Below, in pieces: positions 22,560 to 61,890 of a DNA stretch of 64,000 bases. Numbering within the stretch: the first letter of the stretch is position 1; the number at the start of each line of letters is the position of its first letter. The stretch comes from Hemiscyllium ocellatum (lineage: Eukaryota), in assembly GCF_020745735.1 (NCBI RefSeq), contig NW_026867526.1, forward strand, positions 722,416-786,415, in the 5' to 3' direction. The position numbers and the translations under genes are program-made. The notes below the pieces were generated by a model. The model worked only from the letters and a program-made list of their open reading frames with translations, ran no database searches and was not told where the DNA came from.

Positions 22560-25090
22560 TGCACTTAGTCAAGGATGGTGGCAGAAAGGACATTTGAGGA
22601 CTCAACTACTGAGGTAGCACGAGCTGAGGTAAGCAACAGTAAAGGAGAAAGCACTCTGTTGGGAGTTTTCTCTCGGCCTCCGAATAGTTCCAGTGATGTA
22701 GAGGAAAGGATCCCAAAGATAATTCTGGATAGCAGCAAGAGTAACAAGATAGTTGTTACGGGGGATTTTAACTTTCCAAATATTGACTGGAAATACAATA
22801 GCTCGAGTACTTTAGATGGGTCCGTTTTTGTCCATTGTATACAGGATGGTTTCCTGACACAGTATGTAGACAAGCCAACAAGGGGCGAGACCACATTGGA
22901 TTTGGTACTGGGTAAGGAACCCAGCCAGGTATTAGATTTGGAGGTAGGTGAGCAATTTGGTGACAGTGACCACAATTCGAGTTATGTTTACTTTAGTGAT
23001 GGAAAGGGATAGGTATATGCGGCAGTGTAAGAGTTATTGCTGGAGGACAGGCAATTATGATGCGACTAGGCAAGATTTAGGATGCATCGGATAGGGAAGG
23101 AAACTGCAGGGGTTGGGCACAGTTGAAATGTGAAGCTTTTTCAAGGAACAGCTACTGCGTGTCCTTGATAAGCAAGTACCTGTCAGGCAGGGAGGAAATT
23201 GTCGAGCGATAGAGCTATAGTTTTCTAAAAAGGCTGAATCTCATGTCAAGAAGAAGAAAAAGGCTTCTATTAGGATGAGACACTTTAGGGCACTTTAGAT
23301 TTACAAGTCAGCCAGAAAAGACCTAAAGAGAAGGCTAAGAACCACCAGTGTCCTCTAAAGCGTTCTCTGGGTATATCAGGAATAAAAGAATGACTGGAGA
23401 AAGATTAAGGCCAATCAAGAACCGGAGTTGGAAGTTGTGGGTGGAGTTTGAAGAGGTAGGGGAATTGCTAAATGAATATTTTTCATCAGTATTCACACTG
23501 GAAAAAGACAATATTGTCAAGGAGAATACTGAGAAACAGGCTACTAGATGGAATTCAGTTCACAAAGAGGAGGTGTGAGCAATTTTGGAAAGTGTGAAAA
23601 TAGATACGTCACCTCGGTCGGATGGGATTTATTCCAGGATTCTCTGGGAAGGCAGAGAGGAGATTGCAGAGCCTTTGGCTTTGATCTTTGTGTTGTCATT
23701 GTCTACAGGAATAGTGCCAGAAGACTGGAGGATAACTCCCCCTTGTTCAAGAAGGGGAATAGAGTCAACCCCGGTAATTATAGATCAGTGAGCGTTACTT
23801 CAGTTGTGGGTAAAGTGTCGGAAAACGTCATGAGAGAAAGGATTCATAATTACCTGGAGAGGAATAAGTTGATTAGGGGTAGTCAACACGGTTTTGTGAA
23901 GGGGAGGTTGTGCCTCACAAATCTTCTTGAGTGCTTTAAGATGGTGACTAAACAGGTGGATCAGGGTAAGGTGGTTGATGTGGTTTTCAGTAAGGCGTTT
24001 GATACGGATCCTCATGGTATGCTATTGCAGAAAATAGCGAGGCACGGAATAGAGGGAAATTTAATGGTTTGTATCAGAAATTGGCTAGCTGAAAGACTGA
24101 AAATTGACTCGCTGAAAGGTGTTGGTTGATGGGAAAGTTTCATCCTGGAGTTCAATTACCAGTGGTGTAATGCAAGGATCTGTTTTGCCGCCACTGCTGT
24201 TTGTCACTTTTATAAATGACCTAGATGAAGGTGTAGAAGGATAGGTTAGTAAATTTATGGATGACACTAAGGTCAATGGAGTTGTGGACAGTGCCAAAGG
24301 ATGTTGCAGGTTACAGAGGGACATACGTAAGCTGCAGAGCTGGGCTGAGGTGGCATATTGAGCTTAATGCAAAAATGTGAGGTGATTCACTTTGGAAGGA
24401 ACAACAGGAAATCAGAGTACTGGGCTAATGGTAAGATTCTTGGTAGTGTAGCTGAGCAGATAGATCTCGGTGTCCATGTACATGGATCCCTGAAAGATGG
24501 CACCCAGGTTGATAGGGTTGTTAAGTTGGCACTCAGTGTGTTAGCTTTAATTGGTAGAGGGATGGAGTTTCAGAGTCATGAGGTCGTGCTGCAGCGGTAC
24601 AAAACTCTAGTGCGGCTGCACTTCGAGTATTACTTACAGTTCTGGTCACCGCATTATAGGAAGGATGTGGACATTTTGGAAAGGATGCAGAGAAACTTTG
24701 CTAGGATGTTGCTTGTTATGGAGGGAAGGTCTTAAGAGGAAAGGCTGAAGTACTTGAGCTGTTTTCATTAGAGAGAAGGTTGAGAGGTGACTTAATTGAG
24801 ACATACAAGATAATCAGAGGGTTAGATAGAGTGTACAGTCAGATAGTGATGGCTGGCACAAGGGGAAATAGCTTTAAATTGGGGGTGATAGATATAGGAC
24901 AGATGTCTGAGATAGTTTCTGCTTGCAATAGGAGTAGACTTGCCAACCTTTAGGGCATTAGAATGGTCATTGGATAACCATCTGGATGAAAATGGAATAG
25001 TGCAGGATAGATGGACTTCAGATTAGTTCCACAGGTCAGTGCAACATCAAGGACCGAAGGGCCTGTACTGCACCATAATGTTCTATGTTC
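22560..25090 (+). mobile_element. 5'-truncated, frameshifted CR1/HER1 LINE (EN C-terminal half, RT, 3' tail)
   Basis: EN motifs LGVFSRPPNS, VVTGDFNFPNIDW and SDHN. RT motifs NPGNYRSVSVTS, SQHGFVKG and FSKAFD. Tail ...gaagggcctgtactgcaccataatgttctatgttc. Confidence 0.92.
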
Positions 25091-29592: not shown

Positions 29593-30776
29593 TAAACTAC
29601 AAGTCTCATTCTTGTAAACATATTTTGTACTCACTACAAGCCAATGTATCCTTCCTCAGACCTGATGTCCAAATCTGTTCTCAGTACTCCAGGTAAGGTT
29701 CAAACAGTTTTGAATACTCACAGCGTAACTTCTGCATCCTTGTACTGTCATCCTCTCGTTATAAAAGTTGGCATTTGTTTGATTATAATTTTTTTCTGCA
29801 TCTATTCATGGCATTTTAAAGATCTATTCACCTAAAACCAAAGTCTCTTTGGACTTCCACTATACTTAACTTCATACCATCTTGAAAAACATCATGATTT
29901 ATCCTCCGTCAGTCCAAAATTGATACCTCACACTCACACTGAACTCTCTCTATCACAGTTTTGCCTATCCACCTAGTCTATGAATATCCCCTTGTAATTT
30001 TATGCCATCATGTACACCAGTGTTTCTCAACGGTGGTGGAAGTGCCTCCTGAGGGGCGTTTGCCTTCCTTCGGTCGGCGTTGAAGTCAAAGGGGACGGCA
30101 AGGGGTCACTGAACGACTTTGTAGAGAGCTTACCAATCACTTGGAAGACTGCCATGTCCTTGAAAGACTTTGCTGTGTGCAGATGGACAGTCGCATAACA
30201 CGAGTCTGTTATTTTCCCTGCACCCATGGAGGAGTGCGCTCTGATTGGTTCCTGAGCTATTATTGATAGTCTTTTCCGTGAATAGCAAACCATTTGAACC
30301 CGTTCGCAGTTGGCACTGATTCTACTGTTGAGATCAATATCACCTAACTCGTGTCGCTTCTAAGATGGCATTCTGCTCGGGTGGCAGAATGAATGCACAT
30401 TACAGCTAATTAGCCAATCAAATTTTGCCACTTGTCTGAGCGTCGTAAAATAATTGTGATAAGGTAATACCCATGATTCCATTAGGGTATTCGAGCAACA
30501 GTGTAAAAATGGCCTCATTGAGTAAGAAAAAGTGGAGTATAGCATGGGGTATAGCATGCAGTATAGCATGGACTATTTGTGATATGGCTTTATTCAATCT
30601 CTATCTAATAAGCAATTACCACTGTGCTTGCTCTGTCTGTGAACAAAGTTTTTCCAACGAGGCCATGAAGCCTTCCTATCTTATTAAACATTTGGAAAAG
30701 AAACAGTGACAAAAAGGACGAAGATTTGGCATATTTTCAAGCATTAAGAATAAATTCAATCAGCAACCAACGATAT

Positions 30777-30935
30777 TGGCCAATTCACCTGAACTGCACA
30801 CTCTGGATTATGGAAGGAAACCACAGGGAGAATGTGCAAACTCCACATAAATAGTCATCCGAAGCAGGAACCGAGCCCTAGAACCTAGCACTGTGAGGCA
30901 GCAGTGCTAACCACTGAACCACCATGCCACCCACC
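30777..30935 (-). mobile_element. HE1-type (V-SINE) tRNA-derived SINE, 3' part cut off at the insert junction
   Basis: Reverse complement of gtggcatggtggttcagtggttagcactgctgcctcacag...tttgcacattctcc...gtgaattggcc. Confidence 0.8.
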
Positions 30936-30949
30936 ATGCTTTCATTCTA

Positions 30950-31470
30950 CAGGGCATTGTACCTATCTATCTTAGATGCAGCATATAGTTTTGGTCTCCT
31001 TATTTAAGGAAGTATGTAAATACATTAGAGTACATTAGAAGTGGATCTCAGGGAATGTATTAGATTGATACTGGAAATGAACTGGTCACCTTATGAGGAA
31101 AGGTTGGACAGATTAGGCTTATTTAGAGGAGTGAGAAATGACTTGAGTGAAGTGTAAAAGATCCTGAACTGTCTTGAATTGATGCTTCTTCTTGTGAGTG
31201 ACCCAGAACTAAGGGGCTCTGTTTTAAAGTTAGGAATTGTCTTTTTAGGACGGATATAGGAATTGTTTTTTCCTCAAAGGGTTGTACTGCTTTGGATCTC
31301 TGCCTCAGAGCAAGTCAGTAAATATTTTTGAGGTAAATACGAATACATATTTGTACGGCAGAGGAATCAAAGCTGATTGGATTAAATGGAAATTCAAAAC
31401 ACAAATAAATCAAGGATGACAGAGGAAGATTGATGGTCTGAATGGCCTAGGTCTGTTCCTAGTTCATTTG
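30950..31470 (+). mobile_element. Old CR1 3' fragment within the captured intron
   Basis: tttggtctccttatttaagga...tatgaggaaaggttggacag...gatggtctgaatggcct. Confidence 0.7.
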
Positions 31471-31796
31471 GTTGCATGAGCTCTTCTAATTTTTGATGTG
31501 TTTTAATCTCTTCATATCCTCCAATGGTTCACATTATTAATTTTGGTATTGATCTTCCATTTTTCTAGCCTGCTGTGAGGGATTGGAATCCATTTTCTTA
31601 AGAACACTAGCTTGAGCCTGGAGTTTACTTGTCCAATGCCTTTTGCACAATATCTGGTATCTCCAACATTAGGATAATTTGTGTCCAGCATTAGGATAAA
31701 TTCAAAGTTAGAACCACCTCTTAAAACTTTAAATTTCAAAAATAATCCTATGAAATGAATGGTTTTGTTCAAACATGATCTCTCTCTCTATTACAG

Positions 31797-31963
31797 CTAA
31801 TGTGGCAGTGATTGTGATCCTGTCTCAAAGGAGATGTGGCCTCTCAAAGTGTATCACTTCTTATCTGGTGTCAATGGCAGCGACAGATCTTCTGGTCATG
31901 GTTACGGCTGTAATATTAAACCGGATTGTTGGGATTTATTATCCATCCAGTTTCCTCTCTACT
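31797..31963 (+). pseudogene. Fragment of a class A GPCR (shark GPR139-like family): start of exon 2, TM1-TM2
   Basis: Acceptor tctctctctctattacag then phase-1 (A)NVAVIVILSQRRCGLSKCITSYLVSMAATDLLVMVTAVILNRIVGIYYPSSFLST, with the TM1 Asn, CGLS.C loop and TM2 MAxxD. It stops abruptly at a CR1 tail. Confidence 0.8.
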
Positions 31964-32130
31964 GGGGGCATGGAATGCGCTGCCAGTGGGAGTGGTAGAG
32001 TCAGAATCATTGGCGACCTTTAAGCGGCAATCGGATAGGTACATGGATGGGTGCTTAATCTAGGATAGATGTTCAGCACAACATCGTGGGCCGAAGGGCC
32101 TGTTCTGTTCTGTATTGTTCTATGTTCTGT
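31964..32130 (+). mobile_element. Young CR1 3' end with (TGTTC/TATGTTC) tail
   Basis: About 7 differences by eye from the reverse complement of 51538-51708. Confidence 0.9.
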
Positions 32131-32544
32131 GATATCTATTGCTTTTTCAAAGATAGGAACCACGAATGTGGATGGCCTTGTGGCATCATACAACATAGCT
32201 AAGCTAATTGCAAAATGTGGTAAACCTCATTCCGTTGGTGAATTGTTGGTGCTTCCAGCTATTGCCAAAATATTATCAACTGTGCTACATCAGGAACTAT
32301 CAATGACTATCAAGCATATTCTTCTTGCACCTTCCGTGAGAAGGTGCGTCGATGAAATGGCCTCAAATCTTGAGGATAAATTATGTTCCCTCTTGATATC
32401 GAAAGAAACTGCCGTACAAATTGATGAAAGTACTATATGTGAATTCAAGCTTTACTTTTGGGAGGCGTTGCATGATTTCAAGGATAAGAAGGGGGCTTTG
32501 AATAGGGAAAGGTTGAGAAACGCTGATGTACATGTCTATAATGC

Positions 32545-33100
32545 CATCTAATACGCATTGAAGCTGTCATCTAGATAGGAGACAAAAATGTCAGCAAATC
32601 AATTTCCCAGCTCAGCGATCATACCCACAACCATGGCAACAGGCACCTGAGCTACAAATCTTTACACAAACCTTGAATACCTAACATTGTGTCATCAGCA
32701 AATTTGGATATATGGTCATTGTGTCATTGTCCGATTAATCAATAAATAATGTGAATAACTGAAGCCAAACACAGATCCCAACAGGACACCACTGGTCACA
32801 TCCTGCCAAATCTGAGTTCCTATCCATTATCCATCCATGTCAGTAATTTGCCTTCAATTTCATAGGTTTCTGACTAAGACTATTATGTGGGATTCATCAA
32901 ATGCCTCCTGGTAGTCCATGTAAGCACTGCCTCTGTTGACATTGCCATGTCCGACCTCAGTCATCTCGTCAAACAATTCAGAAGTTTGTCAGGCATGACC
33001 TACGTGTCATGACGCTCATTGATTAACTTAAAAATGTACAAGATATTCAGTGACCCCATCCCTGATGATAAACTCCAACACTTAGACTAACTGCTCAGTG
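32545..33100 (-). mobile_element. Decayed CR1 RT fragment
   Basis: Reverse-complemented RT motifs (cagcaaatttgg; tcaaatgcctcctggtagtccatgtaa; tttgtcaggcatgacc). Confidence 0.6.
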
Positions 33101-50300: not shown

Positions 50301-51825
50301 GTCTCATTTCCCTTACGTGCAAAAGTAGAGGCACACATCAAGAGCCTGGAAAGCTAACGATGATCAAACCACTGCAGTGTGCCCTATGTGCAGCACTGTT
50401 CGAACCCATTGTATCAATTTGTCTATGTGGAGATTTTAAAGATTTGATGAGAGAATTTTTGAAGCCAGGTATAAAACTGATGCATCATGTTGAGGACTTG
50501 GCTGGAAAACCGTAGATGCCTGGTCATTGACAAAGCTGGATATGTGTCATACGAATGTAGCATTATGCTTCAATGAGGATTCCCGTAAATATGCTACAGT
50601 TAATACCCATAAAGGGTGTAACCACTGTATTTGACTGCATTTGTTTTGGGATATCGTCAGCCAATGTATCGTTCCAGTGAATGGCCAAGAACTGTTTACA
50701 AGGTCTACCCATGGTCCCTATTTCTATGAAGATTTGCTAATCACAGGGGAGATCAATAAAGATCATTTAATGTTTATCCAAGACCTTAGGAAGGAAGAAA
50801 ATGTGTTCCAAGGCACCCCAAGTGACGTAATTGAGCTACTGCATGGACAAGTGGGTAAGACAGATTTGAAGATAAAGCGAGGACAACCAAGAGTTCATCG
50901 GCTCTTACGTCTGCATTGGAGCTTCAGTCTTTCCTTGGGTTAGTGAATTATTACGGAAAATTGTGTAATCACCTGGCCTCCATTTTGGCAGCTGAGATTT
51001 GCAATTGAGAAGGGCCTGCATTGCAAATACTCACATCGCCAAGAAGAACCCTTATTGGAATTGAAAAAGCAGCTATCATCATTTAATGCCTTGGCAGAGA
51101 ATGATCTCCAGTCAGATGTGGTACTGACGTACAAAGCGTCACCATCTGGTATCCAGTTACTGCTAGCTCACCGACAGAAGGGATTGCCTTGTCTTACGTG
51201 CTTCCCAGAGTTTGGCTGATGCTGAATGAAAATGCATCCAGATGGAGATGGAATGTTTGGCAGTAACCTTTTGTGTGAGAAAGTTCAGCCAATAGATTCC
51301 TGCAGTTATCTTTGATGTAGCAATGCATCACAAAACCCTGCTAGAGCTACCTGGAGAAGGCAGGGCTATCCCACTTCCAGCTTGAGGTTAAATTCAGAAG
51401 TGAGCTCTTATTCTGAGTGCATGGATTTACAGCTTGGAACACCATATCTGCAGTCAACTGGTTAATGCCTGAAGTCACCATGGCACGTGCCACCAAAGGA
51501 AGAGTTCATTTTAGTTTTAACCATTCTGCATCCCTTAGAACATAGAACATAGAACAATACAGCACAGAACAGGCCCTTCGGCCCACGATATTGTGCCGAA
51601 CATCTATCCTAGATTAAGCACCCATCCATGTACCTATCCAATTGCCGTTTAAAGGTCGCCAATGATTCTGACTCTACACTCCCACGGGCAGCGCATTCCA
51701 TGCCCCCACCACTCTCTGGGTAAAGAACCCACCCCTGACATCTCCCCTATACCTTCCACCCTTCACCTTAAATTTATGTCCCCTTGTAATACTCTGTTGT
51801 ACCCGGGGAAAAAGTTTCTGACTGT

Positions 51826-53245
51826 CTACTCTATCATTTCTCTGATCATTTTATAAACCTCTATCAAGTCACCCCTCATCCTTCGCCGTTCCAACGAGAA
51901 AAGACCGAGAACTCTCAACCTATCCTCGTACGACCTATTCTCCATTCCAGGCAACATCCTGGTAAATCTTCTCTGCACCCTCTCCAAAGCTTCCACATCT
52001 TTCCTAAAGTGAAGCGACCAGAACTGCACACAGTACTCCAAATGTGGCCTAACCAAAGTCCTGTACAGCTGCAACATCACTTCACGACTCTTGAATTCAA
52101 TCCCTCTGCTAATGAACGCTAATACACCATAGGCCTTCTTACAAGCTCTATCCACCTGAGTGGCAACTTTCAAAGATCTATGTACATAGACCCCAAGATC
52201 CCTCTCTTCCTCCACCTGACTAAGAACCCTACCGTTAACCCTGTATTCCGCATTCTTATTTGTTCTTCTAAAATGGACAACCTCACACTTGGCAGGGTTG
52301 AACTCCATCTGCCATTCCTCAGCCCAGATCTGCATCATATCTAAGTCCCTTTGCAGCCGACAACAGCCCTCCTCACTGTCCACAACTCTACCAATCTTGG
52401 TATCATCTGCAAATTTACTGACCCACCCTTCAACTCCCTCATCCAAGTCATTAATAAAAATTACAAACAGCAGAGGACCCAGAACTGATCCCTGCGGGAC
52501 TCCACTTGTAACTGGGCTCCAGGCTGAATATTTACCATCCACCACCACTCTCTGACTTCGACCGGCTAGCCAGTTTTCTATCCAATTGGCCAAATTTCCC
52601 TCTATCCCATGTCTCCTGACTTTCCACATAAGCCTACCATGGGGAACCTTATCAAATGCCTTACTAAAATCCATGTACACTACATCCACTGCTCTACCCT
52701 CATCCACATGCTTGGTCACCTCCTCAAAGAATTCAATAAGACTTGTAAGGCAAGACCTACCCTTCACAAATCCGTGCTGGCTGTCCCTAATCAAGCAGTG
52801 TCTTTCCAGATACTCATAAATCCTATACCTCAGTACCCTTTCCATTACTTTGCCTACCACAGAAGTAAGACTAACTGGCCTGTAATTCCCGGGGTTATCC
52901 CTATTCCCTTTTTCGAACCGGGGCACAACATTCGGTACTCTCCAGTCCCCTGGTACCACCCCCGTTGACAGTGAAGACGAAAAGATCATTGCCAACGGTA
53001 CTGCAATTTCCTCTCTTGCTTCCCACATAATCCTAGGATATATCCTGTCAGGCCCAGGGGACTTGTCTATCCTCAAGTTGTTCAAAATGTCCAATACATC
53101 TTCCTTCCTAACAAGTATCTCTTCTAGCTTACCAGTCCGTTTCACACTCTCCTCTTCAACAATACAGTCCCTCTCGTTCGTAAATACTGAAGAAAAGTAC
53201 TCATTCAAGACCTCTCCTATCTCTTCCGACTCAATACACAATCTT
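51826..53245 (-). CDS. CR1 ORF2 reverse transcriptase domain (open frame, frameshifted near the C-terminus)
   Basis: KSPGPD, NPGNYRPVSLTS, SQHGFVKGRSC, YMDFSKAFDKVPH, GVPQGSVLGP, KFADDTK. Confidence 0.92.
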
Positions 53246-53640
53246 GGGGGGCCTATAGTAAACACCCAACAAGGTGACTGCACCTTTCCTATTTCTGACT
53301 TCAGCCCATACTACCTCCAAAGGCAGATCCCCCTCAAACTTCCTTTCTGCAGCCGTTATACCATTTCTAATTAGCAATGCCACCCCCCTCCTTTTTTACC
53401 ACCCTCCCTAATCTTACTGAAACATCTGTAACCAGGAACCTCCAACAACCATTCCTGTCCCTCATCTATCCACGTTTCCGTGATGGCCACAACATCGTAG
53501 TCCCAGGTACCGATCCACGCCTTAAGTTTACCCACCTTATTTCTGATACTCCTTGCGTTGAAGTATACGCACTTGAGCCCATCTCTGTGTCCGCAAGTAT
53601 TCCCTGTCAGTGCTACCTTCTCCACAGCCTCCCTACATTC
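53246..53640 (-). pseudogene. CR1 ORF2 APE endonuclease N-terminal half (rest deleted)
   Basis: LKCVYFNARSIRNK...DVVAITETW...GGG, a frameshift in a G-run, then GVYYRPP fused directly to RLCIESEE. Confidence 0.88.
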
Positions 53641-53713
53641 TTGGACATCCTGACAAACAGCTAGCTTACTTGCTGGACTACAAGTCCGGATCCCATCCCC
53701 CTGCCAAATTAGT

Positions 53714-54640
53714 TTAAACCCCCCCCCGAAGAGTGCTAGCAAACCTACCCCCCAGGATATTGGTGCCCTTCTGGTTCAGGTGCAACCCGTCCTGTTTGTA
53801 CAGGTCCCACCTTCCCCAGAATGCAATCCAATTGTCCAAATACCTGAAGCCCTCCCTCCTACACCATCCTTGCAGCCACGTGTTCAACTGCACTCTCTCC
53901 CTATTCCTTGCCTTGCTGTCACATGGCACCAGCAACAACCCAGAGATGACGACTCTGTCCGTCCTAGCTTTTAGCTTCCAGCCTAACTCCCTGAGCTCTT
54001 GAATGACCTCCCCGCCCCTCTTCCTACCTATGTCGTTGGTGCCAATGTGTACCACGACTTCTGGCTGCACACCCTCCCCCTTAAGGATTTTGAAGACACG
54101 GTCCGAGACGTCTCGGACCCTGGCACCCGGGAGGCAACAAACCATCCGAGAGTCTCGCCCATGTCCACAGAACCGCCTGTCCGTCCCTCTAACTAGAGAG
54201 TCTCCTATAACTAGCGCTCTCCTCCTCTCCCCCTTTCCCTTCTGAGTCTCAGAGCCAGACCTCACGCCACAGACCCCGTCATTGCAGCTTACACCTGCAA
54301 GGCTGTCCCCCCCAACAGTTTCCAAAGCTGTTTACTTATTGTTTAGGGGAACGACCACAGGGGAACCCTGCACTGCCTGCTTCTTCCCCTTCCCACCTCT
54401 AACTGTTACCCAGCTACCTCTGTTCTCCGGCGTAACTATGTCCCTGTAGTTTCTATCAATCACCCTCTCAGCCTCTCAAATAATGCTCAGTTCATCCAAC
54501 TCCAGTTCCAGTTCCCTAACTCGTTCGGTGAGGAGCAGGATCTGACTGCATTTCCTGCAGATGATGTCGGCAGGAGTATCGGTGGTCACCCCTACCTCAA
54601 ACATCCTGCAGGAGGAACATTCCACTGCCTGCGCTGCCAT
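53714..54640 (-). pseudogene. CR1 ORF1 (zinc finger/leucine zipper plus SGNH esterase), two premature stops
   Basis: MAAQAVECSSC...CRKC...RVRELELEL, then VIGDSLVRG, HIGTND and DGLHLN. In-frame stops at 54476-78 and 54332-34. Confidence 0.9.
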
Positions 54641-57424
54641 GACTGTACACTTTGTCTCCAAAACAAGAACACTGAGTCAATAACACTGAGTCGCTTACCT
54701 GTGGACTTTAAAGTTAGGTTAGAGGAGGAGGATGGGAGGGAGGCCCTACGAAGTAGGGCCTGGGGTCTAGAACACACCCACTCAAATACCAATCACTTAC
54801 CTTCCCGACCAGCTCTGCATTCCAACCTCACTTCCGCCCAGCTCGCGCCGCTGTCTGCGGTGAAAGGGCCGTTGGCGTCGAGGTCATCTTCTGGTCATCT
54901 CTGACAATATCACACTGTAGATACAAGAATTTCCTTTCCTGATGAAACAAGAACCACTGGTGGTGTTCAAAACTGATGACGATCATCATAACCAGGATGG
55001 AATTCTTTCTGGAGCTGGCAAGACCAGATGACAGTTGAAGATGGCACGCTTATGTGGGGAGCAAAGATGTTTGTTACAGACAAAGGTCATTGTCAGATAC
55101 CACCAGACTCCACCTATGATTTCCAAAATGAAGATATTGGTGAGAGGTTATGTCTGATAGCCAGAATTGGATGCCGATGCAGCCATTTTGGTGGGGCAAT
55201 ATCCACAATGCCAAGGACAGAGGACAGAAATTGTCACCAGCAGTGCATCATTTTCATGGCACTGACCAGGTAGAACCTTAGCTCAGTTACAAGTCGAATG
55301 TGCCGGTCCATTATGTGGGATCTGTACTTTAAGGATGTCGGTCACAGATAAAGGGTATTCATTTGCCAGCAGGTAGTTTAGTGTATTGCCTAAAATCGAA
55401 TGGCATTAGCATGTAGTGACAACTGCATGCGTTGTCTGATTGTATGGTGGAAAGTACAGTCCAAACATTGAGGGCAAAGTTAAGTAAACAGCCAACAACT
55501 TCACTGGATGTCAAACTGTCCCACTTTCTCTCTGATTATAGAAACACCACTCACACAACTGCAGTGACAACGCCACCAGAATTGCTAATGTGAAGAAGCC
55601 TCCAAGTTAAATCGGATCTTCTCGGATGTTGTGGGGAGAGTGACACGGCATCAGGAAGGCCAATGCCAGTCACAAAACCCCTCTTTGTGGAAGGCAGTTT
55701 ATTTCATGGCACAAAATGTGCGGTTGAATCGGTGGGAATGGCCCTGAATGTGTTCAAAGTGAAGTCAGGTCACAAGATGTGCAATGCTTATGTCACACTA
55801 GAAGTCCTGAACAATTTTGAGGATCGCATGATTGCTGCAACCTCAAGACTTGGTCAGGAGCACAACATACCCAGCCCCTCACAACATTCAGCAAGGCTGT
55901 CTGAACCTGTGGGTTCTCCCCCTCCTCCACTCAGTGTGGAAGAATCCTCTGAGAGTGAGATGGACATGGTAGATGTTGCAGCATTGACACCATTACCACC
56001 TGTAGAAGAAGATACATTTCTTCTGAGATGCAAGAAGTGGGCCACAGTCCAGCCCAAGGCGGCGGAATGCACCCCCGAGTCCGAAGAAGTGGATCTTGTG
56101 GGAAAATGACTCATGATATGTCCCAGGAATTAGAGGGGGACGGAAGTGAACCTCATTGAATATATATTTCCAGGTTGAGGCTGTTCACCTGGTCTAATCA
56201 GGGAGACCTGACTGGCAGATGTGTCGGCGATCTGCTCACTTGAGCTGTGTCGATGAAGGCTAGGTCAGTGTCATGTACTTTGCCCATGGCGAATTTTGGA
56301 GTGCATGCCATAACATGTTACATGCATGGAGTTCAGCAATATCTAAGCCTTGGATCAAATAGAGAAAGTGGTCCTCCAGCTCGAGAACAGGGCTGCAGTT
56401 GCAATTGGTATTCCCCCTCCAGCATAGAACTGCGGAGGCTCCGAGCTTCCAGTGCAACTGAATATCCTTGTCTGCCTTCTCTGGAAGGAGGAGAGCATCC
56501 CAGGATAGCTCCCAGATGCCAACATCAGGAGTATTTTCAAATAATGGAACATATCAGACTGTGGTACGTTCAGGGCAATGTCCGTGATGTTGACCACTGG
56601 ACAATTCATCACCAAGGTACTTTTCAACTGTCTCTTCCTTATGGCTGATGAACTCCCTCTGCAGTTTCAGTGTGACTTTCGGCCTCAGATGGGCACATTC
56701 AGCATGACTGCGTAGGGCCTTCTTCAACCTTACAAAGGCCTTTGACACCATCAATCAGAAAGCACTTGTACAGCATTCCTCTCCACTTTCGATGCAGCAT
56801 GAAGTTTGTAACCATATGTCACCTGATCCACAACAACGTGCAAATCACCGTAACAACAAGCGGCCTCAACACCCGTCCATTCCCACTTTAACTCCGTGTC
56901 GTGCATTGCTGTGTCTTCACCACAAAACTGCTCTGAATCTACCTCACAACACCGATGAGAGAGAGAGCAAACTAAGATTTTGAATCTTGATGACTTCTCA
57001 TCAGAGCTGTTTATTTATTGTTTGTTTTCTATGATATGTTTGAGTTTGCTTTTATGTTACCCCCTGTGGACCCTGCCCATGAGTGATTAGTGGGAACAGA
57101 GTCCAGCAGAGTCAGGTTTTGATTATGTCTTTCTACAGAATAATAGTGTCTTTTTTGTTCAACTAGTCGCTTTAGGTTCTTTTTGAAAGAGCAGAGCATA
57201 TGTCATGGTCTTGTGCCGGTTCTGGGAGTCTCTGATGCAGGCAGTGATAGTTGTTTATCAGATTGGAAGCCTGTGATGAATGCAGGAATCGGTGCTGGGT
57301 CGAATGCCGTTTGTCATTTGTGTAAAGGATTTGCGTGAGAATATGAGATGCATGGTTGGTGAGGATTGGCAGGTGGAGTTTAATTGGCAGGACCTGTGTT
57401 GAACCGAGAGTCCCAGGGGTTGAC

Positions 57425-59950
57425 AGAACCTCTACAGTGTGGAGGCAGGCCATTTGACACAATAGGTCCACACCACCAGTGCCATTCGCCTTGTGTGCAA
57501 AAGTAGAGTCATGTGCCTGGAGCGCTGAGGGATCATCAAACCACCGTAGTTTGCAGCACTGTTGATATCCATTATTGGTCGAGTCGCATTTGTGCCAATT
57601 TGAAAGAAATGTTGAGCCAGTTTTTGAAGCCAGATAAATAAACAGTAAATTGCATTGAGGAGTTTTACGCAAAAGTGCACGGAACTTGTTTGTCACAATG
57701 CTGGAAATGAGCTGTGTGAATGTGCCATTGTGATTCAGTGAGGATTTCCATAAACATGCACCAATTAATACCCATGAGGGATGGAAACAATATCCTTGAC
57801 TGCCTGTCTTTTAGGGTATCAGCAGGCGGTGAACAGTTCCAGGGAATGAGGGAGAACATTTTCCAAGGTCTACTGCAGGTCAATATTTATCTGAATGATG
57901 TGCTAGATACAGTGATGATCAATAAAAATGTGTTTAATGTTTCTCCAAATCCTTAGAAAGGTAAAAAAAGCAGGTGGGTTCCAAGGCATCCCAACTGAAC
58001 TCATTGAGCGTCAGCATCAACAACAGTGGGCTACGCACATCCAACAATAACATGAGGGTATCCAAGGGTTCCTCAGTTCCCACATCTGTATCAGTGCTTT
58101 GGACTTTCCTTGGCTTGGTGAATTATTACGGAAAATTCTGGAATGAGCTAGCATTCATTCTGGCAGCTTAGATTTGCTATTCAGAAAGAGCCAACTTTGC
58201 AAGTAGCCGAGTCACCAAGATGTAGCTTTTCAGGAGTTGAAAAAGCAGCTATCGGCATTTAAAAGTTTTGCACAGACTACTCCCCAGTGAGATGTGGTGC
58301 TGACATGCGAAGTCTCCCCACACAGTATCCAGTTGCTTCTGGCTCACCGACAGCTCAGCAGAGAGAACTGCCCAGTAGTATATGCTGACCAGGCTTTGGC
58401 TGATGCCAAATGAAAATTCATCCAGAGTGAGAAGGAAAGGTTGGTGATAATCTTTTGTGTGAGAAAATACATCCAACCAATATATTCATTTTACATACGT
58501 TTGATGTAGTAATGCACCACAAATCTCTACTAAGGCTACCCGATGAAGACAGGACCATCCCACTTTTTGCTTCACGTTCGAATTCTGATGTGAGCTTTTA
58601 TTCTGAGTGCATGGAATTACAAGTTGGAACAGCATACGTGCAATCAAGTGGTTAATGCCTGCAGCCAACTCCCTACGGTGGGTACACCATGGTGAGTTCA
58701 ACCTAAGGAAGAATCCGTTCTGGTTTTAAAATTCCTGTACACCCATCTAGTCATCTCTGACAATATCACACTGTGGGTACAACTGATGTGTTCAAAACAA
58801 AAGGGTGATCACTACCAGAATGGAATCCTTTCTGAACCTGGCGAGACCAGACTTGAAGACTGCATATTAATGTGGGGAACCAGTGTGTTTGTCACAAGCA
58901 ATGGTCACTGTTGGATACCAGGTCAACTCCATCAGGGTCATCCTGTGATTTCCAAAATGAAGATGTTGACGAGAAGTTATGTCTTGTGACCAGAATTGGA
59001 TGCCGATACAGCCATTTTTGTGAGGCATTACCCACAGTGCTAACAAGGACAGAAATTGTCACCAGCAGAGCACTATATTCATTGGAATAGCCAGGTATTA
59101 CATTGGATCAGTTACGCATTCAATGTGCCTGTCCATTTACGGGATGTATACTTGTAATGATGTTGGTCACAGATAAAGGGCATTCATTTGCCAGCAGGGA
59201 GTTTTGAGTATTTCCGAAAGTCGATTGGGATTTGGCATGGAACGACAGCTGCATCTGTTGTCCGATAGTCTGGTGGAAATAACAGTCCAAACTTAATAGG
59301 CAAAGTTAAGAAAACAGCTGACAACTTCACAGGATTCCATTCCATGATAAATCTCATCTTCCCAGACCTTGTAGGAAATGGAAAACAACATCTAGAATGC
59401 CAATGCCGGCCACAAAACGGCTCTTTGTGAGAGAGACAGTTTACATCATGGGGCAAAATCTGCTGTTGCAGCCATGGGCAGAGACTTGTGTGGCTAAGAG
59501 GCATATAGTCAGGGTGAGGACAGATTCCATGATGTACAATGCTTGAATTGGACAAGCAGTACTGAACAAATGTGAGGATCACGTGATTGCTGTAACCTCA
59601 CAAGTGGTCAGGAGAAATACACACCCAGTTGTTCTGAACATCCAGATATTCTGTCCAAACGTGTGGGTTCTCTTGGTCCTCCTAGTGTGGAAGAAACCTC
59701 TGAGAGTGAGATGGATACAGCAGGCGTTGCAACATTGTGGCTGTTACCATATGTGGAAGAAGGTAAACATTTTCTGAGATGCAAGAGGTGGGCTGCCGAC
59801 CAACACATGCCAACATTAGCCAAGCCAGAGTCCAGGTTAGTGGACCTCATGGGGAAATGCCTCAGGAGATGCTTCAGGAAAAAGAAAGGGCCTGTAGCTC
59901 AGGACTTAGAGCATGATGGAGGTGATGATTGGAACGGAGTCAGCCAGGTA
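57425..59950 (+). mobile_element. Decayed Gypsy pol, PPT and LTR start of a monomer
   Basis: QLHQGHPVISKMKMLTRSYV at ~58920-58985. PPT-like ttagagcatgatggag at 59906. Confidence 0.85.
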
Positions 59951-60173
59951 ACAGTTGTGGCTGTTAATCTGATCCACTCAGGGAGTCCTGGTTATCAGGT
60001 GTGTCAGGGATTCTGCTGCACGTGAGGAGCTGTCGCAAAGAAGGCGAGGTCAGTATCATATACGTGCATGTGCAAGATCTTGTACTGTATCCCACAGAGT
60101 ATTAGACGTAAGGAGCTCAGCAATCCCCAGTCTTGGACGAAACAGAGAAGGCTGTCATCCAGCTTAAGAATGA

Positions 60174-60378
60174 GATTAGATTAGATTAGATTACTTTCCG
60201 TGTGGAAACAGGCCCTTCGGCCCAACAAGTCCACACTGACCTGACGAAGCGCAACCCACCCATACCCCTACATTTACCCCTTGCCTAACACTACGGGCAA
60301 TTTTAGCATGGCCAATTCACCTGATCTGCACATCTTTGGACTGTGGGAGGAAACCGGAACACCCGGAGGAAACCCACG
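60174..60378 (-). mobile_element. 5'-truncated HE1-type SINE with (ATTAG)n tail
   Basis: attagattagattagattactttccgtgtggaaacagg...ggaggaaacccacg. The tRNA head is missing. Confidence 0.88.
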
Positions 60379-61678
60379 TTTGAGGTGGAGGCACAATTGG
60401 TATTCCCCCTGAGACATTGAAATGGAGGGGCAATGAGCTCCCAATGCAACGGCGTGCCCTTGTCTGCGTCATCTGGATGGAGGAGAGCATCTCAAGAGAG
60501 CTCCCAGATGCCACAGTTGTGAGTGTTTTCAAGACAAGAGAATGTGTCAGACTATGGTAACTACAGCAAAATATCCCTGATGTCGATCATTGGAAAACGT
60601 ATCGCTAAGGCCCTTGTCTACTGTCTCCTGCCTTTGCGTGATGATCCCATCCTGGAATTTCTGTCCATACTTCAGCCACAGATGGGCACAAAGGACAGGA
60701 TTTTACTGTTATGTAGGGTGCTCTTAGACCCTTCAAAGCCTTTGACACCATCGATCAGGAAGCATATATGGAGCGTTCTTCTCCACTTTATTTGCATCAT
60801 GCAACTTGTCACCATCCATCACCTGGTCCATAATGACGTGTAAGTCATCTTCATGACGTGTTCAACATATTGGTTGAACTTTGTCAGGCTCAACATTCCA
60901 TCTCCATCTGAATGCATTTTCATTCGGCATCAGCCAAACTCTGGGAAGCAAGTACTATCAGGTGGTTCTCTCTGTCATTGAGCCAGCAATAACCGGATAC
61001 CAGATGGTGAGGCTTCGCATGTCAGTGTCTCATCTCACTGTAAAATCCTGTCCTTTGTGCCCAGCTACTCCACCAGGGTCACCCTGTGATTTCCAAAATT
61101 AAGATGTTGATGAGAAGTTATGTCTTGTTGCCAGAATTGGATTCTGATACAACCATGTTCGTGGGGCATTTCCCACAGTGCCAACAAAGGCAGAACTTGT
61201 CACCAGCAGTGCACTATATTCATGGGAATGGCCAGGTATAACCTTAGCTCAGTTACACATCAAATGTGCCAGTCTGTTCTGTAGGATCTGTACTTGTAAT
61301 GATGTTGGTCACAGGTAAAGGGCATTCATTTGCCAGCAGGTAGTTTTGAGTATTACCTAAAATCGAATGGCATTCAGCATGTAGTGACAGCTGTATCCAT
61401 TGTCCGATTGTCTGGTGGAAAGAACAGTCCAAATATTGAGGGCAAAGTTAAGAAAACAGCTGGCAACGTCGCTGGATACCAAACTGTCCCACTTTCTGTT
61501 GATTATAGAAACACCGCTCACACAACTGCAGTGACAACTCCACCAGATTTGCTGATGCGAAGAAGACTCCAAGGTAAATGTGATCTTTTTGGATGCTGTG
61601 GGGAGAGTGAAACGGCATCAGGGAGGCCAATGCCGGCCACAAAACCCCTCTTTGTGTGTGAGGCTGTTTACTTCATGG

Positions 61679-61890
61679 CTGCAAATGTGTTGCTGGTCAA
61701 AGCACAGGGTTAGGCAGCATCTCAGGAATAGAGAATGCGACGTTTCGAGCATAAGCCCTTCATCAGGAATAAGAGAGAGAGAGCCAAGCCGGCTGTGTGC
61801 TGTGTGTGGAAGGAGGTCAAGGTGAGGGTGATAGGCCGGAGTGGGGTGGGGGCGGAGAGGTCATGAAGAGGATTGCAGGTTAGGAGGGCG
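61679..61890 (-). mobile_element. PLE 3' UTR/pLTR insertion with hammerhead core, 13-bp TSD
   Basis: TSD GTTTACTTCATGG at 61666-61678 and 61891-61903. The minus strand reads CUGAUGA-A-GGGC-UUAU-GCUC-GAAAC-GUC. Confidence 0.88.

What the first reader, a model, noticed from the sequence alone, without database searches (positions are those of the whole stretch)
30772..32135. Chimeric retro-insertion: GPR139-like pre-mRNA (intron plus exon start) fused to a young CR1 tail, inside a transposase
Seen: the 1354-bp insert (30777-32130) is flanked by GATAT on both sides. Removing it and one GATAT restores the transposase frame exactly (cag caa cca acg ata tct att gct ttt tca aag = QQPTISIAFSK...GLVASYN). 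The insert starts in the middle of a SINE. It runs through ~1 kb of intron-like DNA and a splice acceptor into 167 nt of GPCR exon, then switches at TGGGGG to a 167-nt CR1 3' end with its tail. That tail is near-identical to the young CR1 at 51.5 kb. Inference: the CR1 RT primed on its own RNA and template-switched to an unspliced receptor transcript. CR1-type LINEs are considered stringent and rarely retrocopy host RNA, so this route to exon shuffling, possibly feeding the large shark GPR139-like family, is unusual. It also implies germline transcription of the parent receptor gene.
Basis: partly seen in the sequence, partly recalled or inferred. Interest (0 to 1): 0.85.

Follow-up and report, generated by a model that had tools for sequence, protein, structure and literature searches.

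The report
CR1 tail fused to receptor pre-mRNA copy
A shark jumping gene (a CR1 LINE) pasted a 1.35-kb block into a dead transposase: its own last 168 bases joined to a copy of an unspliced piece of a GPR139-like receptor gene. This is a one-off, non-functional example of a known kind of copying accident, and the exact route could not be settled.

Summary
A 1,354-bp insert (30777-32130) is flanked by GATAT on both sides. It interrupts a decayed hAT-type transposase frame, and other copies of that transposon in the same and sister species run straight across the site.

The insert has three parts:
- 1,185 bp of genomic-style receptor DNA: an antisense SINE piece, an old CR1, intron, splice acceptor and 55 codons of exon 2. 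It is colinear with an annotated two-exon GPR139-like gene of Stegostoma, whose exon continues past the break.
- One unassigned C.
- 168 nt of a CR1 3' end with hairpin and repeat tail, 95.8% like the CR1 at 51.5 kb.

A composite that ends exactly at a CR1 tail inside one duplication pair indicates one CR1 target-primed reverse transcription event.

The parent locus in this genome could not be reached. A read-through transcript from a parent copy that already carried this CR1 tail remains a strong rival (about 0.35).

The fragment is dead on arrival. The receptor family visibly grows by DNA duplication, so retrocopying does not feed it.

The scan has noted other CR1 chimeras in this genome (5S-tRNA-CR1), so this is a further member of a known kind. 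Interest is modest.

The parts
30772..30776 (+). left target-site duplication, GATAT
   Evidence: Sequence read directly. Paralogous transposon copies have a single GATAT here (joint 30771->32131).
30777..30935 (-). 5'-truncated start of the insert: a fragment of a tRNA-type shark SINE, antisense to the receptor gene
   Evidence: 79-87% matches to SINE copies at 41.4, 45.7 and 60.3 kb. Very high depth in all four runs. Absent from the homologous Stegostoma intron.
30936..31796 (+). receptor-gene intron, including an old decayed CR1 3' part (about 30990-31480), ending in the acceptor ttacag
   Evidence: Colinear with L001:11808-12678, the intron of an annotated two-exon Stegostoma GPR139-like gene. 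Identity is 80.5% over 982 columns including gaps. Single-copy-depth contigs in two sister species cover 30990-31880.
31797..31961 (+). first 165 nt of GPR139-like exon 2 (55 codons, TM1-TM2 region), open frame from 31799
   Evidence: 7tm_1 at E=0.002. 92.6% amino-acid identity to P0218 and 91.8% nucleotide identity to L001 exon 2. Homology to three Stegostoma paralogues stops at 31961.
31962..31962 (+). junction base C, matching neither the Stegostoma exon (T) nor the CR1 (G)
   Evidence: Alignments. It is either untemplated or a substitution in the true parent.
31963..32130 (+). CR1 3' end: 168 nt, with hairpin 32087-32102 and an (ATGTTCT)-like repeat tail at 32103-32130
   Evidence: 95.8% over 166 nt to 51708-51544(-), which continues upstream into an RT ORF. 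The hairpin UGGGCC-GAAG-GGCCUG is predicted in both copies.
32131..32135 (+). right target-site duplication, GATAT
30509..30771 (+). upstream part of the interrupted, decayed hAT-type (FAM200/ZBED5-like) transposase relic
   Evidence: Frame continuity across the excised insert. Multi-copy depth. There is an in-frame stop at KKQ*.
32136..32551 (+). downstream part of the transposase relic
   Evidence: The protein-atlas nearest clusters all carry FAM200-ZBED5 RNase-like or DUF4371 domains, with score 0.87, which is lead level only. Pfam gave no hit.
51544..54900 (-). reference copy of the young CR1 family, a dead copy: ORF1 with esterase, an APE remnant, an RT ORF and the same 3' tail
   Evidence: Pfam RVT_1 at 9.8e-35, Exo_endo_phos at 1.2e-4 and Lipase_GDSL_2 at 2.3e-13. 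Sequence. The 5' limit is approximate.

Best explanation
A CR1 reverse transcriptase made one target-primed reverse transcription event at a nick in a dead hAT transposase copy, giving the GATAT duplication. It began on a CR1 3' end (hairpin plus repeat tail) and copied 168 nt of it. The same cDNA then continued on the sense strand of an unspliced GPR139-like transcript: 165 nt of exon 2, the acceptor, about 860 nt of intron and part of an antisense SINE. It stopped there and was joined to the target.

My preferred version, by a small margin, is a template switch in the nucleus from CR1 RNA onto an unspliced, possibly nascent or broken, receptor transcript whose 3' end lay 165 nt into exon 2. 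The lone C at 31962 would be an untemplated or acceptor-end base.

Shown: the insertion boundaries, the composition, the colinearity with a real gene structure, and the CR1 tail at the 3' edge. Inferred: that the host part came from RNA rather than DNA, and that the two parts came from separate RNAs.

The product is a dead fragment with no function.
For: - One TSD pair bounds the whole composite, and paralogous transposons are intact at the site.
- The 3' edge is exactly the CR1 hairpin plus repeat tail, 95.8% like a CR1 with RT, APE and esterase ORFs. Hairpin plus terminal microsatellite is what CR1 RT is thought to need (PMC5729268, citing Suh 2015).
- The host part has the same orientation as the CR1 tail and is colinear with the intron and exon 2 of an annotated gene whose exon continues as ...FLS-ITPVCSF.
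- The unspliced state fits a nuclear RNA partner, as for the nuclear partners of L1 chimeras (10.1101/2025.02.02.635956).
- CR1 template switching has been proposed for SINE genesis (PMC5729268).
- The scan notes a 5S-tRNA-CR1 chimera in this same genome (s1-146952, unchecked by me).
- Sister species show the host segment at single-copy depth, against about three-fold relative depth in this species. This fits a recent, lineage-specific copy (an inference from contig depth).
Against: - The parent locus of this genome was never seen, so separate origin of the two RNAs is unproven.
- The switch would land at an internal exon position rather than at a natural RNA 3' end, unlike classic U6/L1-type chimeras.
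- No microhomology is visible at the joint when it is judged against the Stegostoma exon.
- The CR1 tail carries about 3-4 private changes in 166 nt (two are CpG decays). The host part differs by only about 1% from the closest same-species contigs. This slightly favours a tail that had already aged inside a parent locus.
- There are about three copies of the host segment in this species, where a single switch predicts two.
Confidence: 0.45

Rival explanations
1. Co-transcript, or 5'-transduction-like, retroposition. A GPR139-like gene copy or pseudogene in this genome already carries a 168-bp 5'-truncated CR1 in sense orientation inside exon 2. A transcript reading through intron and exon into that tail was recognised in trans by CR1 RT through the hairpin and repeat tail. 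It was reverse-transcribed from the tail and 5'-truncated in the SINE. No template switch is needed.
For: - This route predicts the same TSD, tail and orientation.
- Stringent LINEs mobilise any RNA carrying their 3' tail (reviewed in PMC3747384 and PMC4176376).
- The tail looks somewhat older than the host part.
- There are about three copies of the host segment in this species against one in the sister species.
- No intact annotated protein more than 93% identical to the exon piece turned up in two family searches, as expected if the parent is broken. This is weak, because the species may simply lack annotation in the database.
- An L1 precedent exists: an intronic source driven by the host promoter (10.1101/2025.02.02.635956).
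Against: - The template is unspliced for at least 1 kb, while trans-recognition by a LINE protein is usually thought to be cytoplasmic.
- The extra copies all seem to span at least 30957-31819, with no 5'-truncation gradient. That looks more like segmental duplication than a set of retrocopies.
- The Stegostoma homologues have an uninterrupted exon.
Confidence: 0.35
2. DNA-templated capture. An ordinary 5'-truncated 168-bp CR1 insertion whose 5' end was repaired by copying or ligating 1.19 kb of genomic DNA from a receptor locus as filler DNA, or by microhomology-mediated synthesis. No receptor RNA was involved.
For: The host part is indistinguishable from genomic DNA: intron, antisense SINE and old CR1 are all retained. 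Nothing in the sequence proves an RNA intermediate for that part.
Against: - The host part lies in sense orientation within a gene and in the same orientation as the CR1 tail. This is expected for RNA copying but only about 1 in 2 (orientation) times the genic fraction for random DNA.
- Filler of more than 1 kb is unusual.
- There is a clean 5-bp TSD without deletion.
Confidence: 0.1
3. The feature is not real as described: either two nested independent insertions, or an assembly artefact.
For: Window-private letters and the three junctions of this copy were not seen in the listed contigs of two same-species runs. No run held all 7 sampled words across the exon/CR1 joint.
Against: - A perfect 5-bp TSD bounds the whole block, and frame restoration is exact.
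- Assemblers do not create TSDs.
- Logan contigs drop minority variants of multi-copy sequence, which explains the missing letters.
- Nested insertion would leave a second TSD pair, and none is present.
Confidence: 0.04

Closest known systems
L1 chimeric insertions (U6/L1, snRNA/L1, mRNA/L1) formed during TPRT
   Same: One TSD pair surrounds a composite whose 3' part is a 5'-truncated LINE and whose 5' part is a sense-oriented copy of another cellular, often nuclear, RNA. The candidate mechanisms are the same: template switch, RNA ligation or splicing, and 5' transduction (10.1101/2025.02.02.635956).
   Different: - The enzyme here is a CR1-clade, 3'-tail-specific ('stringent') LINE, not poly(A)-primed L1.
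- The partner is an internal piece of an unspliced pre-mRNA, not a complete small RNA or spliced 5' exons.
- There is no poly(A).
CR1 template switching proposed for SINE birth (TguSINE1 to PittSINE in passerines)
   Same: The CR1 RT starts on a CR1-type tail with hairpin and microsatellite. It then continues on a different RNA, giving a head-plus-CR1-tail chimera flanked by a TSD (PMC5729268).
   Different: There the new head is a tRNA with its own Pol III promoter, so the chimera became a family. Here the head is promoterless intron and exon, so the copy is a dead end.
LINE 5' transduction, or host-promoter-driven intronic LINE source (e.g. RAP1GDS1/L1PA2)
   Same: Host sequence upstream of a LINE part is carried along because transcription started upstream in the host gene. 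This is the rival reading here.
   Different: - The known cases involve coding-competent L1 and usually spliced exons.
- Here the LINE part is only a 168-nt non-coding tail, so mobilisation would have to be in trans.
- The host part is unspliced.
Processed pseudogene (retrogene)
   Same: It is a reverse-transcribed copy of part of a protein-coding gene, placed in a new location with a TSD.
   Different: The intron is retained, there is no poly(A), only 55 codons are present, and it ends in a LINE tail. It is not a processed retrocopy.

Membership tests
LINE-mediated chimeric retro-insertion (single TPRT event) | One pair of target-site duplications bounds the whole composite, and the empty site is otherwise contiguous | tested here: met
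   GATAT sits on both sides and frame restoration is exact. Paralogous transposon copies skip exactly 1,354 + 5 bp.
LINE-mediated chimeric retro-insertion (single TPRT event) | The 3' part is a 5'-truncated LINE ending in its canonical 3' terminus directly at the TSD | tested here: met
   31963-32130 is 95.8% identical to the 3' end of the CR1 at 51.5 kb. The hairpin and repeat tail abut the GATAT.
LINE-mediated chimeric retro-insertion (single TPRT event) | The 5' part is a sense-oriented copy of another transcript | tested here: inconclusive
   Same orientation and colinear with an annotated gene's intron and exon 2. An RNA rather than DNA origin for this part is inferred, not shown.
Template-switch chimera (as opposed to co-transcript) | The source locus of the 5' part lacks the LINE part at the joint | not testable with these tools
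   The parent locus of the window's own genome could not be fetched. The only evidence is that the Stegostoma homologues (80% and 71% alike) have an uninterrupted exon.
5' transduction / co-transcript retrocopy | A source locus carries the same host/LINE joint, and often there are several offspring with different TSDs | not testable with these tools
   Junction words were too few in the run index. Contig depth hints at about three copies of the host segment, but not of the joint.
CR1-clade LINE (the element supplying the tail) | APE plus RT ORF2, an ORF1 with esterase, and a 3' hairpin followed by a short repeat tail instead of poly(A) | tested here: met
   RVT_1, Exo_endo_phos and GDSL esterase hits on the 51.5-kb copy. 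Hairpin and (ATGTTCT)n-like tail. Clade assignment is by domain architecture only; no RT phylogeny was made.
GPR139/GPR142-like class A GPCR gene (the source of the host part) | Sequence membership, and the conserved intron just before TM1's ...AN(L/V)AVIVILS | tested here: met
   98 library hits. 92.6% to Stegostoma 'probable GPR139' P0218. The acceptor position is identical to that gene's exon-2 start.
Processed retrogene | Introns removed, poly(A) tail | tested here: not met
   About 860 nt of intron plus the acceptor are retained, and there is no poly(A).
hAT (FAM200/ZBED5/Buster-like) transposase (the host of the insertion) | A recognisable hAT/RNase-H-like transposase domain | tested here: inconclusive
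   Pfam gave no hit for either piece. The protein-atlas nearest clusters all carry FAM200-ZBED5 RNase-like or DUF4371 domains at score 0.87, which is only a lead. It is multi-copy in three species.

The most novel reading that the evidence does not exclude
A tail-specific CR1 reverse transcriptase in sharks switches templates in the nucleus onto unspliced, perhaps nascent, host transcripts. Together with the 5S-tRNA-CR1 chimeras noted elsewhere in this genome, this would be a recurrent way for a 'stringent' LINE to move exon-plus-intron pieces of host genes. That would be a route to exon shuffling in genomes thought to make almost no retrocopies.
Probability: 0.3. Interest if true: 0.55.

Novelty: new member of a known kind. 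Interest (0 to 1): 0.35.

Why it matters
CR1-type LINEs recognise their own 3' tail, and this is the usual explanation for why birds, reptiles and fishes have few retrocopies of host genes. A clean, TSD-bounded case in which 1.2 kb of an unspliced host gene rides in on a CR1 tail shows that host sequence can still be moved by this machinery.

If the parent locus proves to lack the tail, this would be direct genomic evidence for CR1 template switching onto pre-mRNA. If the parent has the tail, it would be a natural example of trans-mobilisation of a Pol II co-transcript through a LINE tail.

Either way this copy has no function and does not explain the expansion of the receptor family.

Tried and rejected
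**1. Finding the parent by protein.**
- The 55-aa exon piece found no short fragments.
- The representative search and two family searches seeded with P0004 and P0170 gave 247 shark and ray GPR139-like proteins.
- The best match was 92.6%, from Stegostoma, which is a different species: repeats in its loci are only 70-82% like the window's.
- There was no near-identical parent.

**2. Fetching loci of Hemiscyllium and Chiloscyllium proteins.** This was meant to identify the species. No DNA was served.

**3. Reads.**
- The single read-laying run used Logan contigs that break at the SINE, at the conserved receptor exon (31879/80) and at the CR1 tail.
- No listed contig bridges the exon/CR1 joint or shows an exon continuing past 31961.

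**4. Run index at the joint.**
- A 60-base stretch had fewer than 2 sampled words.
- A 93-base stretch had 7 words. Same-species runs held at most 5. Sister-species low-pass runs held 4, evidently family-conserved words.
- No verdict came from this.

**5. Exact look-up of the 82-aa ORF spanning the joint.** It is not on record.

**6. Our-findings look-up by sequence.** Blank.

**7. Rejected readings.**
- Processed retrogene: the intron is kept.
- Nested double insertion: there is only one TSD pair.
- Window = Stegostoma: rejected on repeat identity.
- Retrocopying as the source of the receptor family: paralogues share the intron and its old CR1.

**8. RNA folding of the tail.** The predicted energy is no better than shuffles (z of -0.03 to -1.7). 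Only the small conserved hairpin is noteworthy.
Full report
**1. What is in the sequence**

GATAT occurs at 30772-30776 and again at 32131-32135, and 1,354 bp lie between them. Deleting the insert and one GATAT joins the flanks into one open frame...FNQQPTISIAFSKIGTTNVDGLVASYNIAKLIAKCGKPHSVGELLVLPA....

That frame is a relic. It has an in-frame stop 23 codons upstream of the site and ends 137 codons downstream. Pfam does not recognise it. A protein-language-model search places the downstream piece among FAM200/ZBED5/GTF2IRD2-type hAT-derived proteins, at lead level only.

The strongest support for the boundaries comes from public reads:
- In Logan contigs of two runs of the same species, a contig joins 30771 to 32131, skipping 1,359 = 1,354 + 5 bases. 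Its depth is several times that of single-copy contigs.
- In two sister species a contig joins 30774 to 32140 with six other letters between.

These are paralogous copies of a multi-copy transposon, not the orthologous empty site. They still show that the family consensus runs straight through the point where the window has the insert.

**2. Anatomy of the insert**

From left to right:
- A fragment of an abundant SINE in reverse orientation, 30777 to about 30935.
- About 860 bp of non-coding DNA containing an old, decayed CR1 3' part.
- A polypyrimidine tract and ttacag.
- 165 nt that translate without stops as NVAVIVILSQRRCGLSKCITSYLVSMAATDLLVMVTAVILNRIVGIYYPSSFLS.
- One C at 31962.
- 168 nt, 95.8% identical to the 3' end of a CR1 at 51544-51708(-).

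The 51.5-kb element continues upstream into an RT ORF, an endonuclease remnant and an esterase-type ORF1. It is therefore a CR1-clade LINE by architecture. Both tails share a small hairpin, UGGGCC-GAAG-GGCCUG (32087-32102), followed by an (ATGTTCT)-like repeat that abuts the right GATAT. A hairpin plus a terminal microsatellite is the signal CR1 reverse transcriptase is thought to require (PMC5729268, citing Suh 2015).

**3. The host part is a colinear copy of a real gene structure**

A search of 1.8 billion representatives with the 55 residues found GPR139/GPR142-like receptors. Two family searches recovered 247 shark and ray members. The closest is P0218, 'probable GPR139' of Stegostoma tigrinum, at 50 of 54 residues.

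Its locus L001 has a short exon 1, a 2.6-kb intron and an exon 2 that starts at exactly the same AG|CTAATGTGGCAGTG as the window.
- Window 30936-31961 aligns colinearly to L001:11808-12843, at 80.5% with gaps. The exon part is 91.8% identical.
- The alignment includes the old CR1, so that element was already in the intron of the ancestral gene.
- The SINE is absent from the Stegostoma copy.
- Homology stops at 31961.
- The Stegostoma exon goes on TCTA|TCACACCAGTGTGC (FLS-ITPVC). The window reads TCTA-C-TGGGGGCATGG, and the CR1 reads GAGTGG-TGGGGGCATGG.

Two further Stegostoma paralogues 40 kb away share the same intron architecture and also stop matching at 31961. The family is a tandem array that grows by DNA duplication with the intron retained, not by retrocopying.

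**4. What kind of event**

The composite ends exactly at the 3' terminus of a CR1 tail. It sits inside a single 5-bp duplication, with the host part in the same orientation as the tail. That is the signature of one target-primed reverse transcription event by CR1 machinery. I put about 0.8-0.85 on this general statement.

The alternatives fit less well:
- Plain DNA duplication does not end at a LINE terminus with a TSD.
- Nested insertions would leave a second TSD pair.
- An assembly artefact would not create a TSD or exact frame restoration.

One caveat applies. No listed contig bridges this copy's own junctions. Several window-private letters (31252, 31261, 31265) are absent from both same-species runs. 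Logan contigs drop minority variants of multi-copy sequence, which probably explains this, but read support for this copy remains unverified.

**5. Which route**

Two RNA routes give the same product:
- (a) Template switch. RT starts on CR1 RNA, copies 168 nt, then jumps to an unspliced receptor transcript.
- (b) Co-transcript. A parent gene copy already has a 168-bp truncated CR1 in exon 2, and a read-through transcript is recognised in trans through that tail.

It would instead point to (b).

The decisive datum is the parent locus in the same genome, and I could not get it:
- The protein route reached only another species.
- Contigs break at the SINE, at the conserved exon (31879/80) and at the CR1.
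- The run index had at most one sampled word across the joint.
- The junction-spanning ORF is not on record.

Indirect evidence points both ways.

For (a):
- The partner is unspliced, as expected for a nuclear RNA met at the integration site.
- A nascent or broken transcript would explain both the retained intron and a 3' end 165 nt into exon 2.
- CR1 template switching is already invoked for SINE birth (PMC5729268).
- The scan notes a 5S-tRNA-CR1 chimera in this genome (s1-146952, not checked by me).

For (b):
- Tail-dependent trans-mobilisation is the defining property of stringent LINEs (PMC3747384, PMC4176376).
- The tail has about 3-4 private changes in 166 nt, against about 1% between the host part and the nearest same-species contigs.
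- Relative contig depth suggests about three copies of the host segment in this species, against one in each sister species. This uses contigs of other old-CR1 loci as single-copy controls. The tool warns that depth is not copy number.
- The extra copies seem to span the whole segment, which fits segmental duplication of the receptor array as well as it fits (b).

A third route, DNA-templated filler at the 5' junction, cannot be excluded, because nothing proves the host part passed through RNA. The sense orientation within a gene argues moderately against it.

My split is template switch 0.45, co-transcript 0.35, DNA capture 0.10 and other 0.10.

**6. Age**

- Sister-species contigs differ from the window by about 3.4% and share indels that all same-species contigs lack.
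- Same-species contigs differ from the window by 0-2%.
- The copy therefore probably arose after the split from those species. This is an inference.

**7. Comparison with known systems, and novelty**

The structure is the CR1 counterpart of L1 chimeric insertions. The same mechanistic alternatives are debated for those: template switch, RNA joining and 5' transduction (10.1101/2025.02.02.635956). It also parallels the tRNA-plus-CR1-tail chimeras that founded bird SINEs (PMC5729268).

It differs in two ways. The partner is an internal piece of unspliced pre-mRNA, and the enzyme is tail-specific.

It is not a processed retrogene. I rate it a new member of a known kind. The scan has already met other CR1 chimeras in this genome.

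The suggestion that this route feeds the GPR139-like family is not supported. The copy has 55 codons, no exon 1 and no promoter, it lies in transposon debris, and the family's paralogues keep their intron.

**8. Verdict**

Interest is 0.35. It would be higher if a genome-wide survey showed many sense-oriented host-plus-CR1-tail chimeras whose parents lack the tail.

Noticed in passing
window 51544-54900 (-): A young but dead CR1 copy. It has ORF1 with a GDSL-esterase domain, only about 60 residues of endonuclease, a 485-aa RT ORF and an intact-looking 3' hairpin and repeat tail. It is about 3.4 kb, so it is internally deleted.
   Followed up: partly
window 54950-57440 versus 58780-63999 (+/+): Two long same-strand blocks are 67-85% alike over about 2.5 kb. 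This is a dispersed or tandem repeat unit of unknown type next to the CR1.
   Followed up: no
L001 and L002 (Stegostoma tigrinum CM060520.1, 77.68-77.75 Mb): A tandem array of at least three GPR139-like genes or copies all share an intron carrying the same old CR1 fragment. The array therefore expanded by DNA duplication after that CR1 inserted.
   Followed up: partly
window 30400-30776 and 32136-32600: The hAT-like relic belongs to a multi-copy family. The empty-site contig depth is about 7-9 times single copy in this species and about 12-18 times in the two sister species. The sister-species copies carry TTCCAC where this species has ATCTAT.
   Followed up: no
window 30922-30935 and 32128 (joints, 'opposite strands'): Many contigs join the SINE head end to a CR1-type tail end on opposite strands, in three species. 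This may reflect SINE and CR1 copies that commonly abut, or a shared tail. It is not explained.
   Followed up: no
window 31900-31945: Four of the 7 sampled 31-mers of this exon stretch are present even in very small (74-185 Mb) contig sets of a sister species and in RNA runs. The AVILNRIVGIY-coding stretch is therefore kept nearly identical at nucleotide level across many paralogues, and it is transcribed somewhere.
   Followed up: no
   Followed up: partly
window 23548-24129 (+): A 193-aa ORF with a reverse-transcriptase domain (RVT_1, 5.5e-10) is part of an older CR1-like copy, about 70% like the 51.5-kb element.
   Followed up: partly
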